From Rhodosorus marinus CCMP1338 (taxonomy: Eukaryota; Plantae; Rhodophyta): a DNA stretch of 64,000 nt. The stretch lies in NCBI GenBank assembly GCA_029953675.1, contig JAMWBK010000005.1:868001-932000 (forward strand). The letters run 5' to 3'. A program made the translations under genes and the position numbers. Positions 1 through 17,717 of the stretch are shown piece after piece; position 1 is the stretch's first letter, and the number at the start of each line of letters is the position of its first letter. The notes under the pieces are model-generated. The model saw nothing but the letters and a program-made list of their open reading frames with translations. It was not told where the DNA came from and did no database searches.

Positions 1-1925
1 CGAGCTCCCGAGCAGAACGTGCCGCGTTCGCGGCGTTGTGAGCTTGTGTCGCCTGACAGAGCGAATTCGACAATGCGAGGCCAGTGTCAGCAAAAATTCA
101 AAAGGTAGGCGCAAAAAGCTTAAAACGAAGCAGAACGGCACATTTCACCTTTTCCAGAATATCGGCGAAGACTTTCACGTTGAGATCGAAATATTCAGAC
201 ATCTCCTCCTCGACAATCTTTCTCATGAAATCTCGCACTTCAGGGTTGCCCAGCTTAGTCTTTGTCTGGCCCTCAAATCTGCGGGATGTGAAACAGGATG
301 AAGTGAATTCTTAGTGGTGCTGTTCTTGAAAAAGGCAAACCTGAGCAATCCAAGGGCTTACTCAGGATCCGGTATTTTAACCGACAGGATAGCCGTGAGG
401 CCCTCCCTGATAAACTCTCCGCTGAGGTTCCCAATCGAAGACTTGAGTTTCCCAGTAGATTTCCCAAGGTTATTGATCGCCTTGGACAGAGCAAACTTAA
501 ACCCGTCGATGTGGGTCCCACCGTCTAATGTCTTGATGTTGTTAACAAAACCAAAAATGCTCTCAGAGTACGAGTCAGAGCACCACTGCAAAACCACCTC
601 CGCCGTCATTCCATCGCGAGTTGCGCTGAAATAAATTGGTCTTGTGTGGAGATTAGTCTTATCCTGGCACATCAGTGCGACATATTCCTTGATGCCCTGG
701 ACCATGTGTAAGAACTGGTTCAGAATAAAATGCAAACCGACGACGTTTGGATTCCAAAACGTGTCCCTACCCCGTCATGTTTGTATTCAACAGACCGCTT
801 TTGGTCGTGGTCCTCGCCCTCCGGAATACGATCATCTTTCAGAACTATTCGGAGTCCAGCATTCAAGAAAGATAGCTCCCTCAACCGGTTCGCTAGGACC
901 TCACGTTGGAACAGAAGTTCTCTTTCAAATATGTGCGGATCTGGGTGAAACCGAACAGTTGTACCGTTGCCTCTGCTGCTGTCTTTTGCTTCGAGCAATC
1001 CAGTCTGAGGAATACCCCTAGCAAACCGCATGGAATATTTTTTGGCATCTCTCCACACGTGGATCTCGAGTTCGTCGCTGAGAGCATTCACCACGGACAG
1101 ACCTACACCGTGAAGTCCTCCGGAAACCTTTGTCATCCAATTAAAGTAAGGTAATATTATCAGGGCGAAAGTTGTCCAAAGAACTAGCCTACTCTGGTAA
1201 GCCAACTGTACCTTGTACCCGCCGTCTCCGAATTTACCACCCGCATGAAGCACTGTGAGAACTGTCTCTAGAGCTGACTTGCCAGTCTTCGCGACTGCTG
1301 CTACTGGAATACCCCGACCATCATCTGAAACCTCCACAAACCCATCCGCTCCTATCCTCACCTCAACTTTGCTACAGTGTCCTGCCAGCGCTTCATCTAT
1401 AGAGTTGTCTACAACTTCAAAAACCAAGTGATGATAGCCTTTCGTTCCAGTGGATCCAATATACATTCCCGGGCGCTTTCTCACAGGCTCCAAGCCCTCC
1501 AACACCGTGATCTTATCTGCGTCGTAAGTCTCAGCTGCATCGAAATAAAAAGGCACGTAAGTAGATGCAACCTAATCCAAGGTTCACAAGGAGGTTGCCT
1601 GTACGCTTACTGACGACTGTAGAATCTCCAGACTGGTCAACCTTCGCAGACCCAGCTGAACTCTTCGGGCCCACAGTTACATTCAGAGTTGAAAGTCTCC
1701 GAGTTCCCCTCGCGATGTATGGACTCCCTGCAGGTCAATCAAAGACAATTCAAACGAACAGCTGGTTAGATCCGGAAGAGACTACAGGAAGAGATACAGA
1801 AATAACCGAAACAGGAATTCTGCGCCGAACTTCGTACCGCCCGCAGCTCTTGCAAATGTACAAAAATGCAGTTCTCCCAGCTGCAGAGCCAGTTTCTGCG
1901 GCAGGGAGGCAACAAACCCGAACAT
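1..1925 (-). CDS. gyrB: DNA gyrase subunit B, organelle-targeted, multi-exon; 3' end runs off the window start
   Basis: Motifs [71 protein letters not shown] and (after splicing) [15 protein letters not shown]. Frames are joined by GT-AG introns (e.g. donors near 1836, 1610, 360). Likely start ATG at 1925 gives [10 protein letters not shown], a transit-peptide-like N-terminus. Confidence 0.95.
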
Positions 1926-3913
1926 CTTAAAAGCGTCGCTCTACTGCGCCGCGCACACTACACACGGCCGATAACCAAAACCCCTCGGCCCCACAGAGCA
2001 CGCGACAACTGTGGAACCTCCCTCAGCCTACCCTCCTATACCCCTCCAGCATCCGTGTCACTAACCACTCCGCCAAAACAAAACCATACACCTAATTACC
2101 ACAACATCCTACCGGGCGGTCACGCCCAACCCCGAACATACACCGGAACGAAATTCGACTGACCTCGTTCCTTCTCCCAGAATCTTCAAGGGATTCTCTT
2201 AAAGAATCAGCATCCAAAAACTCTCGATTCGCTCCTTCCTCACCTTCACAAGAAAATAGCACAGCTCCCTCAACCCTCCCCCTGCCTCCACAAGACCTCT
2301 GCTTCAAGACTCAACATTACATTTTATACTTCGAACCGAACTTTCACCACCATGTTCAATCCCATTTTTCCCCCGTTGCTTTTTACTCCTCCTACAAAGG
2401 CTCAATAAAACATCAAATAAACCCGATAAAGGATCGTCCTTTTCACTGAGAAAAAGTAGGATTTTGTCTAAGCCTTGAAATTTATAAATATAGAGAGTCT
2501 TGCCATCTTGATGGGTCTCGCTCAATGGTTTGGTTGTGGAGGGGTGGGATGTTTGAAAAATGAGCAAAAAAGTCAATCGCTCGTCAAAAGCTTAATAAAA
2601 CTTCAAAATAAACCAGAAACTGGATCGTCCTTATTTCTCCGCACAATGCGATATTTTGGACAGCTAGGAAATTTATTCTAATAGACATGAAGCGTCCCAC
2701 GTCTTGATGCGTATCGCGGTGGTGGAAAATGAGCGTTCGAAGCAAAAATATATATAAACAAAAAATTTGCAAAACAAAATAAATGGAATATGAGAATTAA
2801 CTCGTATTCAGCGTCTTTCCCGTCAAGCGGGTTTGCATGAGAGATTTTTTTGTTTTCAAAATTCGCTTGACGACGTCAAACTCCGGGTGATCCATTTTAT
2901 TTCGAACATATATGAAAAGGGTTCTCCATCGTGATAGGTCTCTCAGCATTAAAAATAACGAATAAACACGATTGTCATCCGGACGTCTAAGGGAACTTTA
3001 GACCCAGAAAATTTAGGGGTAGGTTTTCACGCCTCTTCCACGTCCGGTTCAGGAAAACTTTCTACAAAATAGTTTGATTTGACTCGGATTTTCCCAGGGG
3101 TGGATGTAGTTCAGGTCCATCAAGCTCTTCAGGGTGAGTTGATGTTCTATCCGAGATAGGCGGGGTAAATAGCCCTGAAGCACGGATGTTCCGGTGCTCG
3201 CTGAATGTTTAGGCTAGCCAAGTCACCCGAGATAACCCTGAACCGAGCTATTCATTGGAACAATGCTGGATCTAGTTCACCCAGCCATACAGTCATAAAC
3301 TTGACGCTTGGGCGAGGGCGCTTTCATGCTGACTAGAACAGTACGTAGTATCAACCCTACAGTTCGCATCGACTCGCATCACCAAGCCTACCCAAGGATC
3401 AGCAGAATCGAATCGAGGATACGACCACGGCCCCTACGAATTCGACCCATGCGCCAGGAGCGTTGATGGTTACAATGGAAATCTCGCGTGGCCATCAATC
3501 CTGAAACTCCGAAGATGACTCGCAATCTAACCAACGACAAGAATGCAACAAACCCGGATTAATGTTATCCATAAGAGCACCATGCCTGGCAAATCCCGAA
3601 GGACCCCAGGGCAACGACTTTGTCAACGTCCGCCGCGTCAGTATTTGGCTTCTCGCAGCCCCAACAGGAAAGAAAGGAATTCCACACTCTTCATTCTTTT
3701 ACGACCCAGATCCAAGAAAAAAACCAAGCGTTTGCGGTGATGAAAATCCTCCAGTCGCTTTCCTCAATGCAAACCTAATTAACTGATCCTTCGGGAGAGG
3801 TGATAAGACCGTACCAGCCGGGGGAGGGAGCCGTATCGACTATGTTGCTCAGGGGAAGAATCCAAACGACCGAGATTCGATGAAATTGAAGAGCTGAGAG
3901 TCTGCGCATCGTG

Positions 3914-6677
3914 ATGCTAGCCAAGAAGTGGCACAGGGCTTTGTTTCGCCCTGATGCCGCATCTTCGCTACGTTCGACCATAGGCGGCCTTTCGAGTGGA
4001 GGTCCGAGTAATTCAAGTTCGCAGAAGTTCACGGCCTATAAGAAAATTTACTGAAAGGTTCACTCCTTATCCCGGTTTCTTTTTTCTCGAAGGATTTGCT
4101 CCTCTCTATTCGAAGGCAGCCAGCTCAGCATTGACTCCATATGACTCGTTGGAGGCTGTACGGAGCGAGCCACGATTGAATCCGCTATATAACGCGCTGT
4201 TTCAAATAGCGCAAGGCTACGCAATGTTCCATGACGCACTGATACACAGCAATCGCGATATTCCGAAAGCCACGAACAGGTTCATTCTGAACGCGCTTTC
4301 GTCTCTGTCACCCCACGTGAACTCAAATCCTGAAAAGCTGCTGGATTTGATCCGAGAAGGGTTCTACCACCGTGAGCTGCTGCAGGCTACGTTCGGGGTA
4401 AGAAGACCAGCTGAGCTCTGCTGCAATCTGCCAGCTCTAATCTCATGTTGTGCATGAACCCGTAGGAAATTATGGTAGAAACTCTTCCCTGTCCCGCTGG
4501 TATCGCGGAATGGGTTCCCATGGTAAGTTATCAATGTATAAAGAGAAGCATTAAGAACCTGACCCTGCTGTTGTCTCGATTATCGGCATTAACTCGCCCA
4601 ATCTCTCCTCCCGCTCCCCGGTGCGCCCTGTAAACAAATGTAGACTCTGTCGGAGTCCGATATTATCCAAGCCGGACAAGTTCTGAGGTATTGCGAGGTG
4701 TAGGCCTGACTCTCCGAGCTCGTTTACCCCCTTCCTGAACCCGTGGGCCTTTCCCTTCCTTTAACTTTCAGCGACGCACGGAGATCCAACGGCGTTGCGG
4801 GAGATGAGCAATTGCTCGCTGAGTTCATGACCGTGGGCCTTCGAGGGCTGTCCGAAATGCATCTAGAAACGCTCAACCTGCTGGAAAGCGTTGAGTATAG
4901 AGCGACGGAGGAGACAGAGGTTTTCGATTTCGTAGCAGAAGTAAGCGCCTCTTCGCAGCGAAGAATGGATTGGGACCGTCCTCTATGACTTAATGTTGAA
5001 AACGGAACCGCACGGCGACAGGCCATCTCTCATGTTGCTTCACAGGAACTAGATGTGGCAACGATTCTCAGCTTTTTGCACATCACTGGGCAAACTGTGG
5101 CCAATTCGTTGAGTGAACTCTCGAGTCTAGAAACCAAAGCGTTTGGGACGAAGCAAACTGTGAGAGTCAGGACTTCTCCAGTTGCCGGAACGGGGATGTT
5201 GGTTGCTGGCACGACCACTTCGTAAGAAACGTTAAGGCCAAGTGAAAATTGCCCCCCAGCCGCGGAACCTGATCTTTTCGTCGACTGGTGTGCATGTCTT
5301 CGACAGCGATCTTGAGGTTTTGCTGCACTATGCCAAACGACACAATGTCAACGTGTACACGTACGGTGATCTGATCGAGGCTCACAAGTACTCCCGGTTG
5401 CGCTCTGCGAAGGTACTTATGATAGCCTTGAAATCGTCGCACCATCCTCTTACGCGGTCCAGCGCTCTGATCGGAACGCCTTGGGTTCTAAATCTCAGAA
5501 TTTGGTAGGACACTACGGACGATCAGCGGAACACCAACAGGAGGATTTCGAGAACTTCCCTGGCTCGATAATTGTGGTACGCTTGTCCTCTTCCAACTCG
5601 TAGCGAAGGTGAAAACACCTGTCTAACAGAGCCGTGCACGTGTTCAAGGCTTCCGGGATGCTGCTTCCTGTCCGCAAGTCATACGCGAACAGGCTATTCT
5701 CTATGAGCAATTTCTCAGCACAGGGCGCAAACGACGTAGGTGGCACGTCAACGACGCATTTAGAAGATATTTCCACGGTAAGGACCCCTAGTCATGAGGA
5801 GACGCGTCCCAGCCCCTCTGACGATCGCTGCTTTTGACCCGTTTCGAAGAGGGCCGGATTAGATTCTTGCTTTGGGGAGGATGCTGATGAGGCGAGAGTT
5901 GAAGTCGTGCACTACGATGTCGGTGAAGTAGCTGCGCAGCTTGCGGATGGAGTTGTTAGCGGATCCATTCGCCATGTGTTCTTGCTAGGAGGCTCAAATG
6001 GCGCAAGGCTTGAAAACGACTATGTTTTGCAGGTATAGTCACGGTTCCACACTGCGTGGTAGCCGCTTCACCTCAAGGGAAACGGATCATGGATGGGTTT
6101 CCCCAGCTTAACAGCGCATAGTGAATTGAACCTCTCCCGTATGCGTAGTTCGTGAACCAAGCACATGATGATTCCGTTTTCATAACGTTTGGGTCCGCAA
6201 AGCATGCGCTGGGTAACCTCGTGAAGCCCGAAACCTGTGGTACAATCAACGGAGGCGCATTGCCGAGGTACGAGATAGCCTTGCTACCCACAATCATCCA
6301 TGGGGGTTGTTCTCAACTTCCTTCGTCTTCGTTTTCTGCACATATGTATCATGGCTAGAATCATCGATTTAGGACCTTTGGAGAAAACAGTCGACGCCCT
6401 GCAGCTGGTTCGTGAATTTGAGAAGCAAATGATTCTTAGGACAAGGTCTGATAGGGTACCCCTTTCGACGCTGTACTGGTTGAGTTGCCAGAAGTCGTGC
6501 GCTTGCCTGCTCGCCCTGCTAGCGGACGGCGTGCGAAATATCTACGTCGGGCCAGAGTTGAGCCCCTTCATGAGCGATAGTGTTCAGACTTACTTTTCGG
6601 ACGCATACAAGCTGTACCCTATCTCAACACCGGAAAATGACATCAAGAAAATGTCGACTTTAACGATATCCGACTGA
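3914..6677 (+). CDS. hcp: Hybrid cluster protein (prismane/HCP) homolog, highly divergent, lacking Fe-S cluster ligands; about 12 exons; putative mitochondrial presequence
   Basis: Manually spliced translation is collinear with HCP as recalled: FILNALSSLSPHVNSNPEKL (cf. FFSTLTNVNFD), NVNVYTYGDLIEAHKY (VNVYTHGEMLPAHGY), NLVGHYG..QQEDFENFPGSII (HLVGNYG..QQVEFARFPGPIV), IRHVFLLGGSNGAR (LRHIFLLGGCDGAR), LPRIIDLG (LPRLVDAG), LLALLADGVRNIYVGPELSPFM ([22 protein letters not shown]). Phase-compatible GT-AG introns were found at every junction. Start ATG at 3914 is inferred. Confidence 0.9.
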
Positions 6678-8471
6678 CGAAAGTCCAAGTTCTGAAAAGG
6701 AGAATGCGAAAAGTCTGTTGGAGAGCGCGAACGACATTTCCAAGAGCTTCGGAACTGGGTGCTATGCTCATGCTAATTTGATTCAAACCGCGGAGCTTGT
6801 CCCAAAATGCAAACGGATCGCCATCCGTTGGGAGTACTGCGCAGCACTAGCGCGCGATACATCGGAACTGGGGTATTGCGGTTTCATTGTTCATGCGGCA
6901 AGGTGTCCTCCGTCACCGAGCGTTTCGATCCTTCCGATTTTCTTTGTGATTCTTAGTATTTCGTGGGGTTTGTTTAGACCGGGCAGATGCCTTGCCTAAT
7001 ATGCTTTTCGTTGCCGCTTTGTTGAGCTCTGCTAACGCTTTTCAGAGGAGCGATGCGTTGGCACGGTCCGACTCATGAGCTATCACGACTCCGGACCTTT
7101 CGATATCAATCAAGGAACTAGCGCCGCAGAGCGGATCCCACTTACGTCCACAACTCTCAAGTTTTCTGGAGTGGATGGCCTAGTCATGTACAAGGCCACG
7201 CAGCTCTGGGAAGCTGCGGACCAGTCGAGCGCACTATACACGAACACCCTTGTAAAGCAAAAAAAAAAAAAAAAAAAGGAAGAAAACCAGCGCATTCAAT
7301 TGACCATATCACTTTTACAAAAGGTAGCTCCCAACATAGTATAGTGTAAACTATACCAACAAAGCCAACCAGTCCACACCACAACACGTACACCAAACCA
7401 TATTCCGTACACCAAACACCCCTGAGGCAAAATTTTGATTACAACGTCATGCAATCCAAAGGAGAAGACTGAATCGTCCAAAATCAGATCCGTTCGAGTT
7501 TTCAATCAACATCATAGAATTAATAAATTTCGACTATTTTCAAACACCTAACGGGGATATTGTACGAATTTTATAGAAAACATTTCAAACAGCAGCTTTC
7601 CCCCCCACGCCATTCAACGACAATTCATGTGGCCGTTGGCGAATGACCAATTAGGAGGTACGCAACGAGTTATTTGTTTTGTTTTTTTCCAATACCTGGA
7701 TATAAGTGGAAGGGAAAGAAACTATTTTAACCCCCAGGGTAGGTTCTGCATTTCCTCCCCTTCCAGAGAGGAAAAGCAGAGCTCATAGGTCTGGTTTTCC
7801 ACACTATCTCGATTGCGGGAGGTTGCCGTAAAATGTTAAAAATTACTTTACTGGAAACCGGTTAAATAAAAGTTACAAAAGGGGGGGGGGAGGGCCGGTG
7901 GGGGAGGCGGTGAGGGGACGGAGGGAGGGTTGGTTGGACTTGTTAAAATCGAGGGCGCAACCAAAAAAAAGGCCGTGTCCTTGTTATTAGACAAAAAAAA
8001 GGATCCAATAATAATTTTTGAATGTAAAAATAAACAAATTGAACCCAGACCTAATTTAGATCGGTCTCTAGATTAGATTTTTGTGTCAGTACTTCAAAAA
8101 TATCCCATCTATGAAATGATAGGAATGTTTTGAGGTAGTTTTCGCTTAATTTTTTTTGTCCCATATATATTTGGAGGGAAAGAAAAATAAACGATAATTT
8201 AAAAATGCGCGCGGAGGTGGGGGGGGGTGACATTTTGAGCGATTGAGTTGTTTTCTCCAAAGGGGGGGGCGGGAGCACATATGTTTGTATTTTGTTTTGT
8301 CTTTTTTTGTTTTTTTGATATATGAGGAAAAAGCCTTTCTTCACGTTTTGATTAGAGGAAGTCCTTCTTGTTTTGTTTTTAGGGTTTTTTTCGTTCGCGA
8401 TGGGAAAGAGGTTGGCGAAACGCGTATATAAATACCATTTATGTCCTTTTTTTTTTTTTTCATTCTTGACG

Positions 8472-15824: not shown

Positions 15825-17717
15825 TCAATCTGGACCGGCTGAGTGGGATCTCAATGTCGCACGACACTTTTCTAGAGAAATTTTGCCGTCGCTAACAAAG
15901 GATGAAAACGGTGGATCAATCGTGTCTTCGGCGAGGATCTCGAACGTCCCCAGTCCATGCGCTGTATCCGCTTCACCCTCGATCAGTGAAGCAAAAATGC
16001 TGAGATAACTCAGCATCAATCCAGAGTCGAACGTTGAGCTGACGATAACGCGAGCGGCGCTCGCTCCTTTCCGAATCAGGTCAACGGTAGGTACGAGCCC
16101 TCCAATAACGGTTGGCTTCACAACGTACGCGGCCAATCCGTCTTCCACCGAATGCTTCCACCACGTCTCGCTCTCAACAAGGTTTTCGTCCAGAGCGAAT
16201 CGGAGCCCTGTTCGGGCGTAGAACTGCGGCAGCTCCTCAGGGTCTTCCAGCGGCTCTTCGATGAACTCTATGAGATGAGGTCTTTCCAAACTCTTCCAGA
16301 AGCTCGTGGCCTCATCGAGCGTCCAGGAGCGATTTGCGTCTAGGCGTAGCCGGCTTCCGTGGTCCTCCAGTGCCTTGCACAAGAGGTTTACGTTACTTGC
16401 GTCATCTTCCAAGGAGCCGCCACCAACTTTCATCTTCATGACGGAGTATCCTTGTCCAACCAGCGATAGAGCGTACGCTGATGGATCGACTACTCTCGGA
16501 ACAACCGAGTTTATAAATACATGCGCTTTGGGCACTACCGACCAGCGAAGACGAAGAATCGTAGCCATCACTAAATCCAGCTCCGAGTCGACCTGAGCCG
16601 CAATCAGTTGCAGGGAGGCCATTTCCATAGCACACTGTACTGTTGGCGTTGAGCGAAGTCTGAGAAGCAGTTGAAAGGTTTGTGATTCACCCAGAACATC
16701 TTCGCACGCTTTGGAGACTTCAGCAACGTCCTCGAGCAGCGTTCCCTTGTGAAATCCGGGCAGCGGGGAAGCTTCTCCAACTCCATGCTTGGAGTCTTTG
16801 GCTTTAAGGATCACAACTAGCCCCTCTCTGTGATCGACAGTAGACCTTCCAGCGACGCTCATCTTCTTCCTCAGAGCCAGTGAGAAGCGTCGTTGCTCGA
16901 TTGTTTGAACGCAAGGAGTCGACATCGTCCTGAGAATTCGCTTGAATGTGACAGTAGTGCGCACAACCGCATCGATAGCTTGATGAAGACAGTTGTGACC
17001 AGCATCTGGAACAACTGCTGAAAAGTGTCTTTGCGATGCTCTTCGTGTGATGGCAACGTACTTCCGATCCTCTGAACCGCAGATCATCAGCGACGGTGGA
17101 CTTGCAGGCCCGAGAAGGAATTCCCAGAGGCTCGTCATTCGAGCTGGTGAGTAGGCGACCACAGCTTTCGACATGTTCCGTTGGGTGTTAACGCGTTTTA
17201 TTCTTCTGATCCAAAGCTGTTTGGATTCCTCGGAAAGACTTGAGCCCCAGAGGCCTGCCGAATACCAGCCGTGTAAGAACTGGTCGAAGTTGGCCTGTAT
17301 CTTCCTGGAGTATTCTAGATCGCGCTCCATTCGGTCAGATCTCTCGCTTCCTGTAGATGGTAGACCAGGATCGGAGCTGATCAGGATCAGATTCTCAACT
17401 AATCCATGCTCCACGCTTGCGGCCAAGCTTAGCGCAACTCGTCCTCCGAGGGAGTATCCCACAACGATGCAGGACCGAATCTCCAGATCATCGGCCGTCT
17501 CCCGCACCAATGCGGCGGCCTCTGCAACGTCCTCGACAGACACAGATGCTGATTCTCCGTGAAGCGGGAGATCAATCGCGACTACACGTTCTCCATCACC
17601 AATGCGACTAACAAACGCCTCGAAGATCGGCTCCTTGTCTCCGAGGAAGCCATGGAGAAGGAGCCAGACACCAGAAACAATCCGTCGATCGCCAGCTTCT
17701 GTAAAAGCAAGACTCAT
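15825..17717 (-). CDS. menH-menC: Fusion of MenH (SHCHC synthase, alpha/beta hydrolase) and MenC (o-succinylbenzoate synthase); single exon
   Basis: N-terminal half: LHGFLG, GYSLGG (nucleophile Ser), GSEDRKY (Asp), AGHN (His). C-terminal half has enolase-superfamily OSBS motifs GEASPLPG, KMKVG, RLDANRSW, IEEPL, ALDE, VVKPT, GLGT. Confidence 0.9.
   Translation of the reverse strand: MSLAFTEAGDRRIVSGVWLLLHGFLGDKEPIFEAFVSRIGDGERVVAIDLPLHGESASVSVEDVAEAAALVRETADDLEIRSCIVVGYSLGGRVALSLAASVEHGLVENLILISSDPGLPSTGSERSDRMERDLEYSRKIQANFDQFLHGWYSAGLWGSSLSEESKQLWIRRIKRVNTQRNMSKAVVAYSPARMTSLWEFLLGPASPPSLMICGSEDRKYVAITRRASQRHFSAVVPDAGHNCLHQAIDAVVRTTVTFKRILRTMSTPCVQTIEQRRFSLALRKKMSVAGRSTVDHREGLVVILKAKDSKHGVGEASPLPGFHKGTLLEDVAEVSKACEDVLGESQTFQLLLRLRSTPTVQCAMEMASLQLIAAQVDSELDLVMATILRLRWSVVPKAHVFINSVVPRVVDPSAYALSLVGQGYSVMKMKVGGGSLEDDASNVNLLCKALEDHGSRLRLDANRSWTLDEATSFWKSLERPHLIEFIEEPLEDPEELPQFYARTGLRFALDENLVESETWWKHSVEDGLAAYVVKPTVIGGLVPTVDLIRKGASAARVIVSSTFDSGLMLSYLSIFASLIEGEADTAHGLGTFEILAEDTIDPPFSSFVSDGKISLEKCRATLRSHSAGPD

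What the first reader, a model, noticed from the sequence alone, without database searches (positions are those of the whole stretch)
3914..6677. A 'cluster-less' hybrid cluster protein: all Fe-S ligand positions lost or altered in an intact 12-exon gene with a mitochondrial-type presequence
Seen in sequence (manual splicing): the N-terminal Cys-x2-Cys-x(n)-Cys-x(n)-Cys [4Fe-4S] motif is replaced by LYSKAASSALTPYDSLEAVRSEP, with no Cys. The hybrid-cluster ligands change as follows: SGHD to AGTT (His to Thr), HGEM to YGDL (Glu to Asp), TSNC to ASGM (Cys to Met), GGCDG to GGSNG (persulfide Cys to Ser), LACGK to FGSAK (Cys to Ser), GQCND to GPLEK (Cys to Leu), WFEQK to WLSCQK (Glu lost). Established: these residues bind the two clusters HCP needs for NO/hydroxylamine reductase and S-nitrosylase activity. 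The frame stays open over 11 phase-compatible GT-AG introns to a normal C-terminus, which argues against a decaying pseudogene. The N-terminus MLAKKWHRALFRP..SSLRS looks like a mitochondrial presequence. Inference: a repurposed HCP pseudoenzyme (scaffold, regulator or partner of an active HCP, or binder of another ligand) in red algal mitochondria. I know of no description of such a subfamily but cannot search to confirm.
Basis: partly seen in the sequence, partly recalled or inferred. Interest (0 to 1): 0.82.

Follow-up and report, generated by a model that had tools for sequence, protein, structure and literature searches.

The report
Red-algal hybrid cluster protein without clusters
A nuclear gene of the red alga Rhodosorus marinus encodes a full-length relative of the iron-sulfur enzyme "hybrid cluster protein" that has lost every metal-binding residue, yet it is transcribed, correctly spliced and kept by natural selection, so it is a repurposed dead enzyme and not a decaying gene.

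Summary
Window 3914-6677 (+) holds a 12-exon gene with GT-AG introns. It encodes a 600-aa Prismane/HCP-fold protein (Pfam E 2e-45; AF2 pTM 0.87, TM 0.81-0.84 to solved HCPs). All 4 cubane cysteines and all 7 hybrid-cluster ligands are replaced.

The organism is Rhodosorus marinus (NCBI NDN08_001229, "hypothetical protein"). A full-length MMETSP transcript ORF from a sister lineage (88% identical) is colinear with the exon chain and carries the same replacements. A partly spliced transcript contig confirms three junctions and gives dN/dS 0.21 (CI 0.13-0.33), so this is not a pseudogene.

The closest relative is the canonical, presequence-bearing HCP of Bangiopsis, a red alga of the same class (273 bits; NJ bootstrap 76%). 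The Rhodosorus branch evolved about twice as fast. No canonical Rhodosorus HCP turned up.

The protein fails NCBIfam's hydroxylamine-reductase cut-off (239 against 367 bits). Positions that were invariant in HCPs but replaced here now drift at background rate, while the retained structural core is tightly conserved. This favours an abandoned active site in a conserved scaffold.

Mitochondrial targeting is plausible but untested. Other degenerate HCP lineages (diatom-related, several bacterial) arose independently. I found no paper describing any of them. It is a new variant of a known kind, of moderate interest.

The parts
3914..4007 (+). Exon 1. ATG at 3914 and residues 1-31 of the presequence-like N-terminus. 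The NCBI model uses an alternative donor at 4001.
   Evidence: An in-frame TGA lies at 3887. Sister-lineage ORFs P0153 and P0154 read GGPK|VAPL across this junction.
4093..4397 (+). Exon 2. It holds the end of the presequence-like region (to about residue 41, nt 4121), the Cys-free remnant of the cubane-binding loop (about residues 34-57, nt 4098-4169), and the first helices of domain 1.
   Evidence: Residues 42-140 are 98% identical between the two Rhodosorus lineages. AF2 predicts residues 1-53 as disordered.
4466..4522 (+). Exon 3
   Evidence: P0154 runs through exons 1-2-3 and then reads into retained intron 3.
4644..4687 (+). Exon 4
   Evidence: colinear with P0153.
4772..4940 (+). Exon 5
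   Evidence: P0128 covers this exon and then reads into retained intron 5.
5022..5221 (+). Exon 6. It includes codon 5211-5213 (Thr287), at the position of the His ligand (GHD>GTT).
5307..5412 (+). Exon 7. It includes codon 5368-5370 (Asp311), at the position of the first Glu ligand (HGEM>YGDL).
5499..5576 (+). Exon 8
   Evidence: The exon is 92% identical to L001, while the flanking retained introns are about 81% identical.
5649..5777 (+). Exon 9. It includes codon 5658-5660 (Met355), at the position of a Cys ligand (TNC>SGM).
   Evidence: The 5777|5850 junction is spliced in L001.
5850..6032 (+). Exon 10. It includes codon 5994-5996 (Ser443), at the position of the persulfide Cys (GGCDG>GGSNG).
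   Evidence: The 6032|6149 junction is spliced in L001.
6149..6267 (+). Exon 11. It includes codon 6194-6196 (Ser471), at the position of a Cys ligand (ACGK>GSAK).
   Evidence: The 6267|6359 junction is spliced in L001.
6359..6677 (+). Exon 12, ending in the TGA stop. It holds Leu502 (6378-6380, for a Cys ligand), Cys538 (6486-6488, at the second Glu ligand position, with a one-residue insertion), and the lineage-specific Cys542 and Cys544 (6498-6500, 6504-6506).
6678..7246 (+). 3' untranslated region, as far as the sister-lineage transcript contig aligns. A genomic A19 tract follows at about 7259-7277.
   Evidence: (71% identity with gaps).

Best explanation
This is the Rhodosorus descendant of the organelle-targeted hybrid cluster protein of stylonematophycean red algae. 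Before two Rhodosorus lineages split, it lost both iron-sulfur centres: the N-terminal cubane and the hybrid [4Fe-2S-2O] cluster, together with much of their second shell. It kept the three-domain HCP fold. It has since been held under purifying selection as a non-redox protein, that is, a pseudoenzyme.

Shown: the gene structure, its transcription and splicing, the loss of all ligand residues, retention of the fold (predicted), purifying selection, the accelerated branch, and its closest relative.

Inferred: it no longer reduces NO or hydroxylamine. It acts by binding a partner protein or a ligand, using the conserved scaffold and especially the N-terminal segment and helical domain (residues 42-140), and not by chemistry in the old active site. 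It is imported into an organelle, most likely the mitochondrion.
For: - Fold and family: Pfam Prismane 155.7 bits against a cut-off of 27. PDB HCPs match at E 3e-39. The AF2 model has pLDDT 83 and pTM 0.87. Foldseek TM normalised to the target is 0.81-0.84 for 8CNR, 1E2U, 1GN9 and 7DE4.
- Cluster loss: 0 of 4 cubane Cys and 0 of 7 hybrid ligands are kept. Only 42% of the 170 columns that are at least 90% conserved in canonical HCPs are retained, against 74% in Bangiopsis, and the losses cluster around every ligand. The protein scores below both NCBIfam hydroxylamine-reductase equivalog cut-offs: 238.9 against 367 and 227.8 against 360.8.
- Not a pseudogene: the ORF is intact in two lineages that are 88% identical, with the same replacements. 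Spliced transcripts exist. Over 286 codons, dN is 0.061, dS 0.284 and omega 0.21, with a bootstrap CI of 0.13-0.33.
- Origin: the best non-Rhodosorus hit is the canonical Bangiopsis sp. CCMP1999 HCP at 273 bits, against at most 231 bits for any other. An NJ tree groups them with 76% bootstrap. Tajima relative-rate tests give 110-117 unique changes in Rhodosorus against 42-53 in Bangiopsis, p 8e-6 to 3e-9. No closer canonical HCP ranks among the 120 best relatives of the Bangiopsis protein.
- Abandoned site, conserved scaffold: between the two Rhodosorus proteins, canonical-invariant columns that are retained differ at 2.8%. Canonical-invariant columns that were replaced differ at 13.6%, which is the same as ordinary columns at 11.3%.
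- Targeting: residues 1-41 are only 73% identical, while residues 42-140 are 98% identical. The first 20 residues carry 5 Arg/Lys and 1 acidic residue, with an amphipathic peak. The Bangiopsis relative begins MSYRVAASRLLRRSV....
Against: - No biochemical, localisation or interaction data exist, so absence of metal binding is inferred from sequence alone.
- The seven ex-ligand positions themselves are identical in both Rhodosorus lineages. Two pocket-lining stretches (residues 325-378 and 521-550) are 100% conserved, and three new cysteines (C538-x3-C542-x-C544) sit at the old Glu ligand site. A new site in the old pocket therefore cannot be excluded.
- dN/dS covers only the C-terminal 48% of the protein and rests on one pairwise comparison.
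- The Bangiopsis grouping comes from a distance tree with two long branches.
- Absence of a canonical HCP in Rhodosorus rests on a ranked word-index search, not on a scan of the genome.
Confidence: 0.72

Rival explanations
1. Neofunctionalised pocket. The old hybrid-cluster cavity now binds a different metal, cofactor or small molecule, for example through Asp311, Met355 and Cys538/542/544. The protein would then be a new enzyme or sensor, not an inert scaffold.
For: All seven ex-ligand positions are identical in the two lineages, and the surrounding segments 325-378 and 521-550 are 100% conserved. Three cysteines were gained at or next to the former Glu ligand; they are absent from Bangiopsis and from canonical HCPs. 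Polar residues invariant in the family are kept: K471, R493, D496, Q537 and K538 in 598-aa numbering.
Against: Taken together, the canonical-invariant positions that were replaced now vary as fast as ordinary positions (13.6% against 11.3%), which is not expected of a newly optimised site. AF2 confidence dips at the loops that once carried two of the Cys ligands (blocks 441-450 and 471-480). No coordinates were available to test the geometry.
Confidence: 0.2
2. It is still a working HCP that binds its clusters through non-canonical ligands.
For: The fold is retained and Glu>Asp is a conservative change. Six conserved cysteines remain in the protein.
Against: No Cys lies in the cubane region. 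His>Thr, and four Cys change to Met, Ser, Ser and Leu. The second-shell motifs are also replaced. The protein scores far below the equivalog cut-offs. [quoted passage not shown]
Confidence: 0.03
3. It is a young, still-intact pseudogene or a transcribed relic with no function.
For: The protein evolved about twice as fast as its nearest relative. Some transcripts retain introns. An omega of 0.21 is not especially low.
Against: The 600-codon frame is open across 11 introns in two lineages separated by dS 0.28. The upper bound of the omega CI is 0.33. Differences at the three codon positions are 22, 14 and 50. The structural core is conserved at 97%.
Confidence: 0.03
4. It is a paralogue that works alongside a canonical HCP in the same cell, as a regulator or partner, and is not the sole degenerated orthologue.
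For: In the diatom-related lineage, degenerate and canonical forms sit in one clade, so such pairs may exist. The Rhodosorus genome itself was not scanned.
Against: Among the 120 best relatives of the Bangiopsis HCP, nothing exceeds 43% identity and none is named Rhodosorus, although the R. marinus NCBI proteome and MMETSP data are in that collection. No second HCP gene lies in the 64-kb window. Bangiopsis shows no degenerate copy in the exhaustive search.
Confidence: 0.1
5. The protein is imported into the plastid, not the mitochondrion. This rival concerns location only and is compatible with the main explanation.
For: According to the review PMC8003979, three of the four Chlamydomonas HCPs are predicted to be chloroplast proteins. 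The N-terminus is rich in Ser and Ala and has aromatic residues at positions 6 and 11.
Against: The first 20 residues carry 5 basic and 1 acidic residue, with a short amphipathic stretch. The closest relative has a classic Arg-rich presequence. HCPs are mitochondrial in Acanthamoeba by microscopy, and mitochondrial homologues are predicted in many eukaryotic lineages (PMC13632651). No predictor was available.
Confidence: 0.3

Closest known systems
Class I/II hybrid cluster proteins (hydroxylamine/NO reductase; Desulfovibrio vulgaris 1E2U, D. desulfuricans 1GN9, Methanothermococcus 8CNR, E. coli 7DE4)
   Same: It has the same Prismane/CODH-superfamily three-domain fold over about 540 residues, including the middle region that class III lacks. 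Alignments show 22-30% identity, E 3e-39 by sequence and TM 0.81-0.84 by predicted structure. Many structural Gly, Pro and aromatic positions are kept, as are K471, R493, D496 and Q537-K538.
   Different: It has no cubane cysteines and none of the seven hybrid-cluster ligands, and the second-shell motifs are replaced. It retains only 42% of family-invariant columns and scores below the NCBIfam equivalog cut-offs. It is eukaryotic, has 11 introns, and carries an N-terminal extension.
Canonical organelle-targeted eukaryotic HCPs: Bangiopsis sp. CCMP1999 (EukProt EP00190_P007500), Chlamydomonas HCP1-4, Acanthamoeba mitochondrial HCP, Guillardia, Phaeodactylum
   Same: They are nuclear-encoded with an N-terminal targeting extension. 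The Bangiopsis protein is the nearest relative of all (32% identity, 273 bits; NJ 76%) and comes from the same red-algal class.
   Different: Those proteins keep all 11 ligand residues. Bangiopsis passes the hydroxylamine-reductase cut-off at 493 bits. The Rhodosorus branch is about twice as long.
Other degenerate Prismane-family proteins seen here. These are a diatom-related eukaryotic group (P0007/P0315, P0116, P0325), Lachnospiraceae HCP+DUF1858 proteins (P0068 cluster), a Methylococcaceae MAG protein (P0030), and the 'incomplete active-site' structural groups of Ni-CODH catalogued by Inoue et al. 2019 (PMC6344411).
   Same: They are homologues with cluster ligands partly or wholly replaced, and they are still annotated 'hydroxylamine reductase'. 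P0068 shares the Ser, Ser, Leu replacements at three Cys positions.
   Different: They arose independently. P0007 and P0116 group with canonical P0099 at 97% bootstrap and never with Rhodosorus. Most keep the cubane or some hybrid ligands. Rhodosorus is the most complete loss seen (0 of 11). None appears to have been discussed in the HCP literature I could search.
Pseudoenzymes derived from metalloenzymes in general. From my own knowledge: IRP2 versus aconitase, and gamma-carbonic-anhydrase-like subunits of plant complex I that lack Zn ligands.
   Same: A cofactor-free homologue of a metalloenzyme is retained under selection for a non-catalytic role.
   Different: No partner, complex or activity is known here. 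The analogy is a lead from memory, not a test.

Membership tests
Prismane/CO dehydrogenase superfamily (Pfam PF03063) | Significant full-length match to the family HMM above the gathering score | tested here: met
   155.7 bits against a cut-off of 27; residues 65-591 cover profile positions 32-513 of 513.
Hybrid cluster protein (HCP, class I/II architecture) | Three-domain HCP fold including the middle region absent from class III | tested here: met
   AF2 pTM 0.87. Foldseek TM (target-normalised) is 0.81-0.84 to 8CNR, 1E1D, 1E2U, 1GN9 and 7DE4 over 541-559 columns. This rests on a predicted structure, not a solved one.
Hybrid cluster protein (functional enzyme) | N-terminal four-Cys motif that binds the [4Fe-4S] (class I/III) or [2Fe-2S] (class II) cluster | tested here: not met
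   The aligned region has no Cys at all. The sister lineage has a single Cys there.
Hybrid cluster protein (functional enzyme) | The seven hybrid-cluster ligands (1 His, 2 Glu, 4 Cys including the persulfide Cys) | tested here: not met
   The positions read Thr, Asp, Met, Ser, Ser, Leu and (Ser)Cys in both Rhodosorus lineages.
Hydroxylamine reductase equivalogs (NCBIfam NF003658, TIGR01703) | Whole-protein score above the curated cut-off | tested here: not met
   238.9 against 367 and 227.8 against 360.8. The control, Bangiopsis HCP, scores 493.3 and 465.7.
Hydroxylamine/NO reductase (activity) | Reduction of NH2OH or NO, and a Fe-S-O cluster detectable by EPR | not testable with these tools
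   This needs purified protein.
Pseudoenzyme | Homologue of an enzyme that lacks its essential catalytic or cofactor residues | tested here: met
Pseudoenzyme | Intact, expressed gene under purifying selection (as opposed to a pseudogene) | tested here: met
   A full-length transcript ORF and spliced contigs exist. Omega is 0.21, CI 0.13-0.33, over 286 codons.
Pseudoenzyme | Demonstrated lack of the ancestral activity, and a defined non-catalytic role | not testable with these tools
   No biochemical or interaction data are available.
Pseudogene | Frame disruptions, loss of splice sites, or neutral evolution (omega about 1) | tested here: not met
   There are no stops or frameshifts, all 11 introns are GT-AG, and omega is well below 1.
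Mitochondrial matrix-targeted protein | Cleavable, positively charged, amphipathic N-terminal presequence, and experimental localisation | tested here: inconclusive
   The protein has an N-terminal extension relative to bacterial HCPs. There are 5 basic and 1 acidic residues in the first 20, and a hydrophobic moment of 0.77 at residues 3-13. Residues 1-41 evolve fastest and are predicted to be disordered. No targeting predictor was available and no localisation data exist.

The most novel reading that the evidence does not exclude
The HCP scaffold has been re-used in Rhodosorus organelles for a genuinely new job. One possibility is a new metal or ligand site built from Asp311, Met355 and the gained Cys538-x3-Cys542-x-Cys544 motif. 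Another is a recruited accessory subunit of a mitochondrial complex, in a lineage whose mitochondrial genomes are fragmented into minicircles and whose mitochondrial proteins evolve fast (PMC10250338). In that second case the binding element would be the perfectly conserved, Cys-free remnant of the cubane loop (residues 42-57) together with the first helices.
Probability: 0.2. Interest if true: 0.7.

Novelty: new variant of a known kind. Interest (0 to 1): 0.5.

Why it matters
HCP is a widespread but still puzzling Fe-S-O enzyme, and recent structural work treats its ligand set as universally conserved. This gene shows that the fold can outlive both clusters and stay under selection. That gives a natural cluster-free HCP for asking what the scaffold does beyond redox chemistry.

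It also raises an annotation problem. Several independent degenerate lineages are labelled "hydroxylamine reductase" in public databases, including common gut Lachnospiraceae proteins and diatom-related ones, so metabolic inferences about NO or hydroxylamine detoxification from such labels can be wrong.

For red-algal biology, it suggests that Rhodosorus has given up HCP chemistry that its relative Bangiopsis keeps. The practical reach is modest, because only one genus is known to carry it and no function is in hand.

Tried and rejected
- The word-index protein search with the window protein found only itself and one bacterial HCP, so I ran the exhaustive HMMER search instead.
- The metagenome-contig scan with the sister-lineage protein found nothing. 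DNA for dN/dS came from an exact-protein look-up instead. It covers only exons 7-12. No DNA was available for the N-terminal half.
- A shared 'TPY' motif at the lost cubane site suggested common ancestry with the eukaryotic degenerate proteins P0007 and P0116. I rejected this. They are not better BLAST hits than canonical HCPs, they group with canonical P0099 at 97% bootstrap, and they grouped with Rhodosorus in 0 of 200 replicates.
- The Ser, Ser, Leu pattern shared with Lachnospiraceae P0068 suggested descent from a bacterial degenerate lineage. I rejected this because the tree places P0068 inside a bacterial clade.
- I looked for a second HCP gene in the window and found none.
- Literature searches for HCP with pseudoenzyme, red alga, ligand loss or Rhodosorus found no description.
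- No ML tree program, targeting predictor or model coordinates were available. The phylogeny is therefore NJ only, targeting is judged from composition, and pocket geometry could not be measured.
- I considered measuring omega of neighbouring genes between the two lineages as a background. I did not do it because it would not change the verdict.
Full report
**Gene model.** I translated the region in three frames and joined the open segments at GT-AG sites. This gives a 12-exon gene on the + strand: 3914-4007, 4093-4397, 4466-4522, 4644-4687, 4772-4940, 5022-5221, 5307-5412, 5499-5576, 5649-5777, 5850-6032, 6149-6267 and 6359-6677. The 11 introns are 68-121 nt long. The ORF has 600 codons, and an in-frame TGA at 3887 sits just upstream of the ATG. 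Intron 1 has several in-frame donors. Residue numbers below follow my 600-aa model unless stated otherwise.

**Organism and annotation.** The protein is 100% identical to NCBI 'hypothetical protein NDN08_001229 [Rhodosorus marinus]' (598 aa, on a 3.19-Mb contig). The window is therefore nuclear DNA of a stylonematophycean red alga. Its genome paper reports 8,392 genes and 24,821 introns (PMC10250338), so this gene is intron-rich for that genome. The neighbours are ordinary nuclear genes: a GyrB-like ATPase, GH63, a MenH/MenC-type fusion, Cpn60/TCP1, pyruvate kinase, MutS and a Kelch protein. No second HCP gene lies in the window.

**Family and fold.** Pfam Prismane matches residues 65-591 at 155.7 bits. 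Solved HCPs from Desulfovibrio, Methanothermococcus and E. coli match at E 1e-36 to 3e-39. An AlphaFold2 model built on an alignment with 58 canonical HCPs has mean pLDDT 83.3 and pTM 0.87, and only residues 1-53 are disordered. Foldseek returns class I/II HCP structures first, with target-normalised TM of 0.81-0.84. Class III HCPs and Ni-CODHs follow.

**Ligand loss.**
- The region that aligns to the Cys-x2-Cys...Cys...Cys cubane motif has no cysteine.
- The His ligand is Thr287.
- The first Glu ligand is Asp311.
- The four Cys ligands are Met355, Ser443 (the persulfide position), Ser471 and Leu502.
- The second Glu ligand is replaced, with a one-residue insertion, by Ser-Cys538.

Which residues are ligands is established knowledge from the Desulfovibrio HCP structures. 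The loss goes beyond the ligands. Of the 170 columns that are at least 90% conserved in 58 canonical HCPs, the Rhodosorus protein keeps 42%, and the losses cluster around each ligand motif. The protein also falls below both NCBIfam hydroxylamine-reductase equivalog cut-offs (238.9 against 367, 227.8 against 360.8), whereas the canonical Bangiopsis HCP passes at 493 bits.

**Expression and splicing.** An exhaustive HMMER search of 1.84 billion representatives found only two close relatives. Both are fragments of one MMETSP transcript family, and everything else is at most 33% identical. The 90% cluster of the larger fragment contains P0153, a 600-aa complete ORF from MMETSP Transcript_15800. 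P0153 is 88% identical to the window protein and colinear with my exon chain, without gaps apart from the two residues at the intron-1 junction. There it reads GGPK|VAPL, which matches donor 4007 and not NCBI's 4001. It carries the same replacements at all ligand positions. A sibling isoform retains introns 3 and 5 (P0154, P0128). A 1,566-bp JGI transcript contig (L001) retains introns 7 and 8 but splices introns 9, 10 and 11 exactly at 5777|5850, 6032|6149 and 6267|6359. Its 3' UTR aligns to about 7246.

**Selection.** I aligned L001 to the window over 286 codons (the end of exon 7 through exon 12). Nei-Gojobori estimates are dN 0.061, dS 0.284 and omega 0.21, with a bootstrap 95% interval of 0.13-0.33. 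Differences at codon positions 1, 2 and 3 are 22, 14 and 50. The retained introns are about 81% identical and the exons 83-92%. The gene is therefore under purifying selection in both lineages, and the cluster loss predates their split.

**Origin.** The representative P0009 belongs to a cluster whose full-length member P0157 is the HCP of Bangiopsis sp. CCMP1999, a red alga of the same class. P0157 has all 11 ligand residues and an Arg-rich N-terminal extension. It is the best non-Rhodosorus match to the window protein: 273 bits and 32% identity over 541 residues with few gaps. No other HCP in hand scores above 231 bits. A neighbour-joining tree of 49 sequences groups Rhodosorus with Bangiopsis at 76% bootstrap, on a very long Rhodosorus branch. 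Tajima relative-rate tests with four outgroups give 110-117 changes unique to Rhodosorus against 42-53 unique to Bangiopsis (p 8e-6 to 3e-9). When I searched with the Bangiopsis protein, nothing above 43% identity and nothing named Rhodosorus appeared among the 120 best hits, although the R. marinus proteome and MMETSP data are in that collection. The simplest reading is that the window gene is the degenerated orthologue of the red-algal organellar HCP, not an extra paralogue. A direct scan of the whole genome is still needed.

**Where constraint lies now.** I compared the two Rhodosorus proteins region by region.
- Residues 1-41 are 73% identical.
- Residues 42-140 are 98% identical. This stretch includes the Cys-free remnant of the cubane loop and the first helices.
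- Residues 325-378 and 521-550 are 100% identical.

I then sorted alignment columns by their behaviour in canonical HCPs.
- Family-invariant columns that Rhodosorus retains differ at 2.8%.
- Family-invariant columns that Rhodosorus has replaced differ at 13.6%.
- All other columns differ at 11.3%.

So the structural core is still tightly held, while the former first- and second-shell positions, taken as a class, have been released to the background rate. That pattern fits a conserved scaffold with an abandoned active site better than new chemistry in the old pocket. The numbers are small, however. The seven ex-ligand positions themselves, and the gained Cys538/542/544 motif, are unchanged between the lineages.

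**Targeting.** Relative to bacterial HCPs, the protein has an N-terminal extension of about 26-30 residues ahead of the loop remnant. The first 20 residues contain five basic residues and one acidic residue, with a short amphipathic peak. This part evolves fastest and is predicted to be disordered. HCP is mitochondrial by microscopy in Acanthamoeba, and homologues in many eukaryotic lineages are predicted to be mitochondrial (PMC13632651). In Chlamydomonas, three of the four HCPs are predicted to be plastid proteins (PMC8003979). Mitochondrial import is therefore the likelier reading but remains an inference.

**Comparison with what is known.** By fold and descent the protein belongs to the Prismane superfamily and to the HCP clade. 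It fails the defining features of a functional HCP. I found no paper describing cluster-less HCPs. [quoted passage not shown] In the sister Ni-CODH family, incomplete active-site motifs have been catalogued (PMC6344411).

The top 150 hits also contain other degenerate HCP-like proteins.
- A eukaryotic group (P0007/P0315, P0116, P0325) has presequence-like N-termini. It nests among canonical presequence-bearing HCPs whose cluster includes Phaeodactylum tricornutum XP_002179987.1.
- Lachnospiraceae proteins carry a C-terminal DUF1858 domain. They keep the cubane but have lost the hybrid-cluster ligands (P0068 cluster, 39 members).
- Other cases include a Methylococcaceae MAG protein (P0030).

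The tree and BLAST ranks show that these lineages are independent of the Rhodosorus case. Rhodosorus is the most complete loss seen, with 0 of 11 ligand positions kept.

**Verdict.** The gene encodes a cluster-less, selectively maintained HCP-fold protein that is specific, as far as current data go, to Rhodosorus. The most likely mechanism is a non-redox binding or scaffolding role in an organelle (confidence about 0.7 for 'functional but not an HCP enzyme'). A new ligand or metal site in the remodelled pocket is the main rival (about 0.2). It is a new variant of a known kind. The interest is moderate because the function is unknown and the distribution is narrow. The recurring, unremarked degeneration of HCPs across bacteria and eukaryotes adds some weight.

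Noticed in passing
L002 339-2150 (P0116), L003 1563-3320 (P0007); proteins P0315, P0325: A second, independent eukaryotic lineage of cluster-degenerate HCPs. The cubane Cys are lost and the hybrid ligands read H-G-R-S-L-S-E or H-D-R-G-C-I-D. The N-termini look like presequences. The group nests among canonical presequence-bearing HCPs whose 90% cluster includes Phaeodactylum tricornutum XP_002179987.1, so it is probably from diatoms or other ochrophytes. P0007 still passes the NCBIfam hydroxylamine-reductase cut-off (415 bits).
   Followed up: partly
proteins P0068/P0163/P0164 (Bilifractor and Lachnospiraceae MAGs), P0093, P0115, P0094: Bacterial Prismane+DUF1858 proteins annotated 'hydroxylamine reductase'. 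They keep the cubane Cys but have lost most hybrid-cluster ligands (for example D-D-D-S-S-L-D). The P0068 cluster has 39 members on many gut-type contigs.
   Followed up: partly
proteins P0030/P0177 (Methylococcaceae MAG), P0074, P0129, P0045, P0044, P0055, P0135: Further degenerate HCP-like proteins. P0030 keeps the cubane, His and both Glu, but all four hybrid Cys are S/T/D/S. P0074, P0129 and P0045 carry a long, charged, coiled-coil-like insert in domain 1.
   Followed up: no
window 3995-4010 (intron-1 donor): The NCBI model NDN08_001229 uses the donor at 4001 (598 aa). The sister-lineage full-length transcript ORF reads GGPK|VAPL, which corresponds to the donor at 4007 (600 aa). Other in-frame donors exist at 3971, 3995 and 4016.
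   Followed up: partly
L001 34-119 and 198-261; MMETSP Transcript_15799 ORFs P0154 and P0128: Transcripts of the sister lineage retain introns 3 and 5 (Transcript_15799) and introns 7 and 8 (L001), while other introns are spliced. Either splicing of this intron-rich gene is inefficient or pre-mRNA was sampled.
   Followed up: partly
window 358-1556 (-): ORFs on the minus strand translate to a DNA gyrase B-type ATPase (Pfam HATPase_c; GyrB-like motifs in the translation). It is presumably an organelle-targeted gyrase gene whose remainder lies upstream of the window start.
   Followed up: no
window 15825-17717 (-): A single 630-aa ORF combines alpha/beta-hydrolase (MenH-like) and MenC/enolase-C domains. 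It looks like part of a fused phylloquinone/menaquinone biosynthesis gene.
   Followed up: no
window 7259-7277: A genomic A19 tract lies just downstream of where the sister-lineage transcript stops aligning (7246). L001 itself has AATAAA near its end and no poly(A), so the true 3' end in this strain is unresolved.
   Followed up: no
protein P0356 (NCBI: Solemya velum, 151-Mb record): A bivalve genome record carries a canonical HCP with a long N-terminal extension. It could be a genuine animal HCP, a transfer from a symbiont, or contamination.
   Followed up: no
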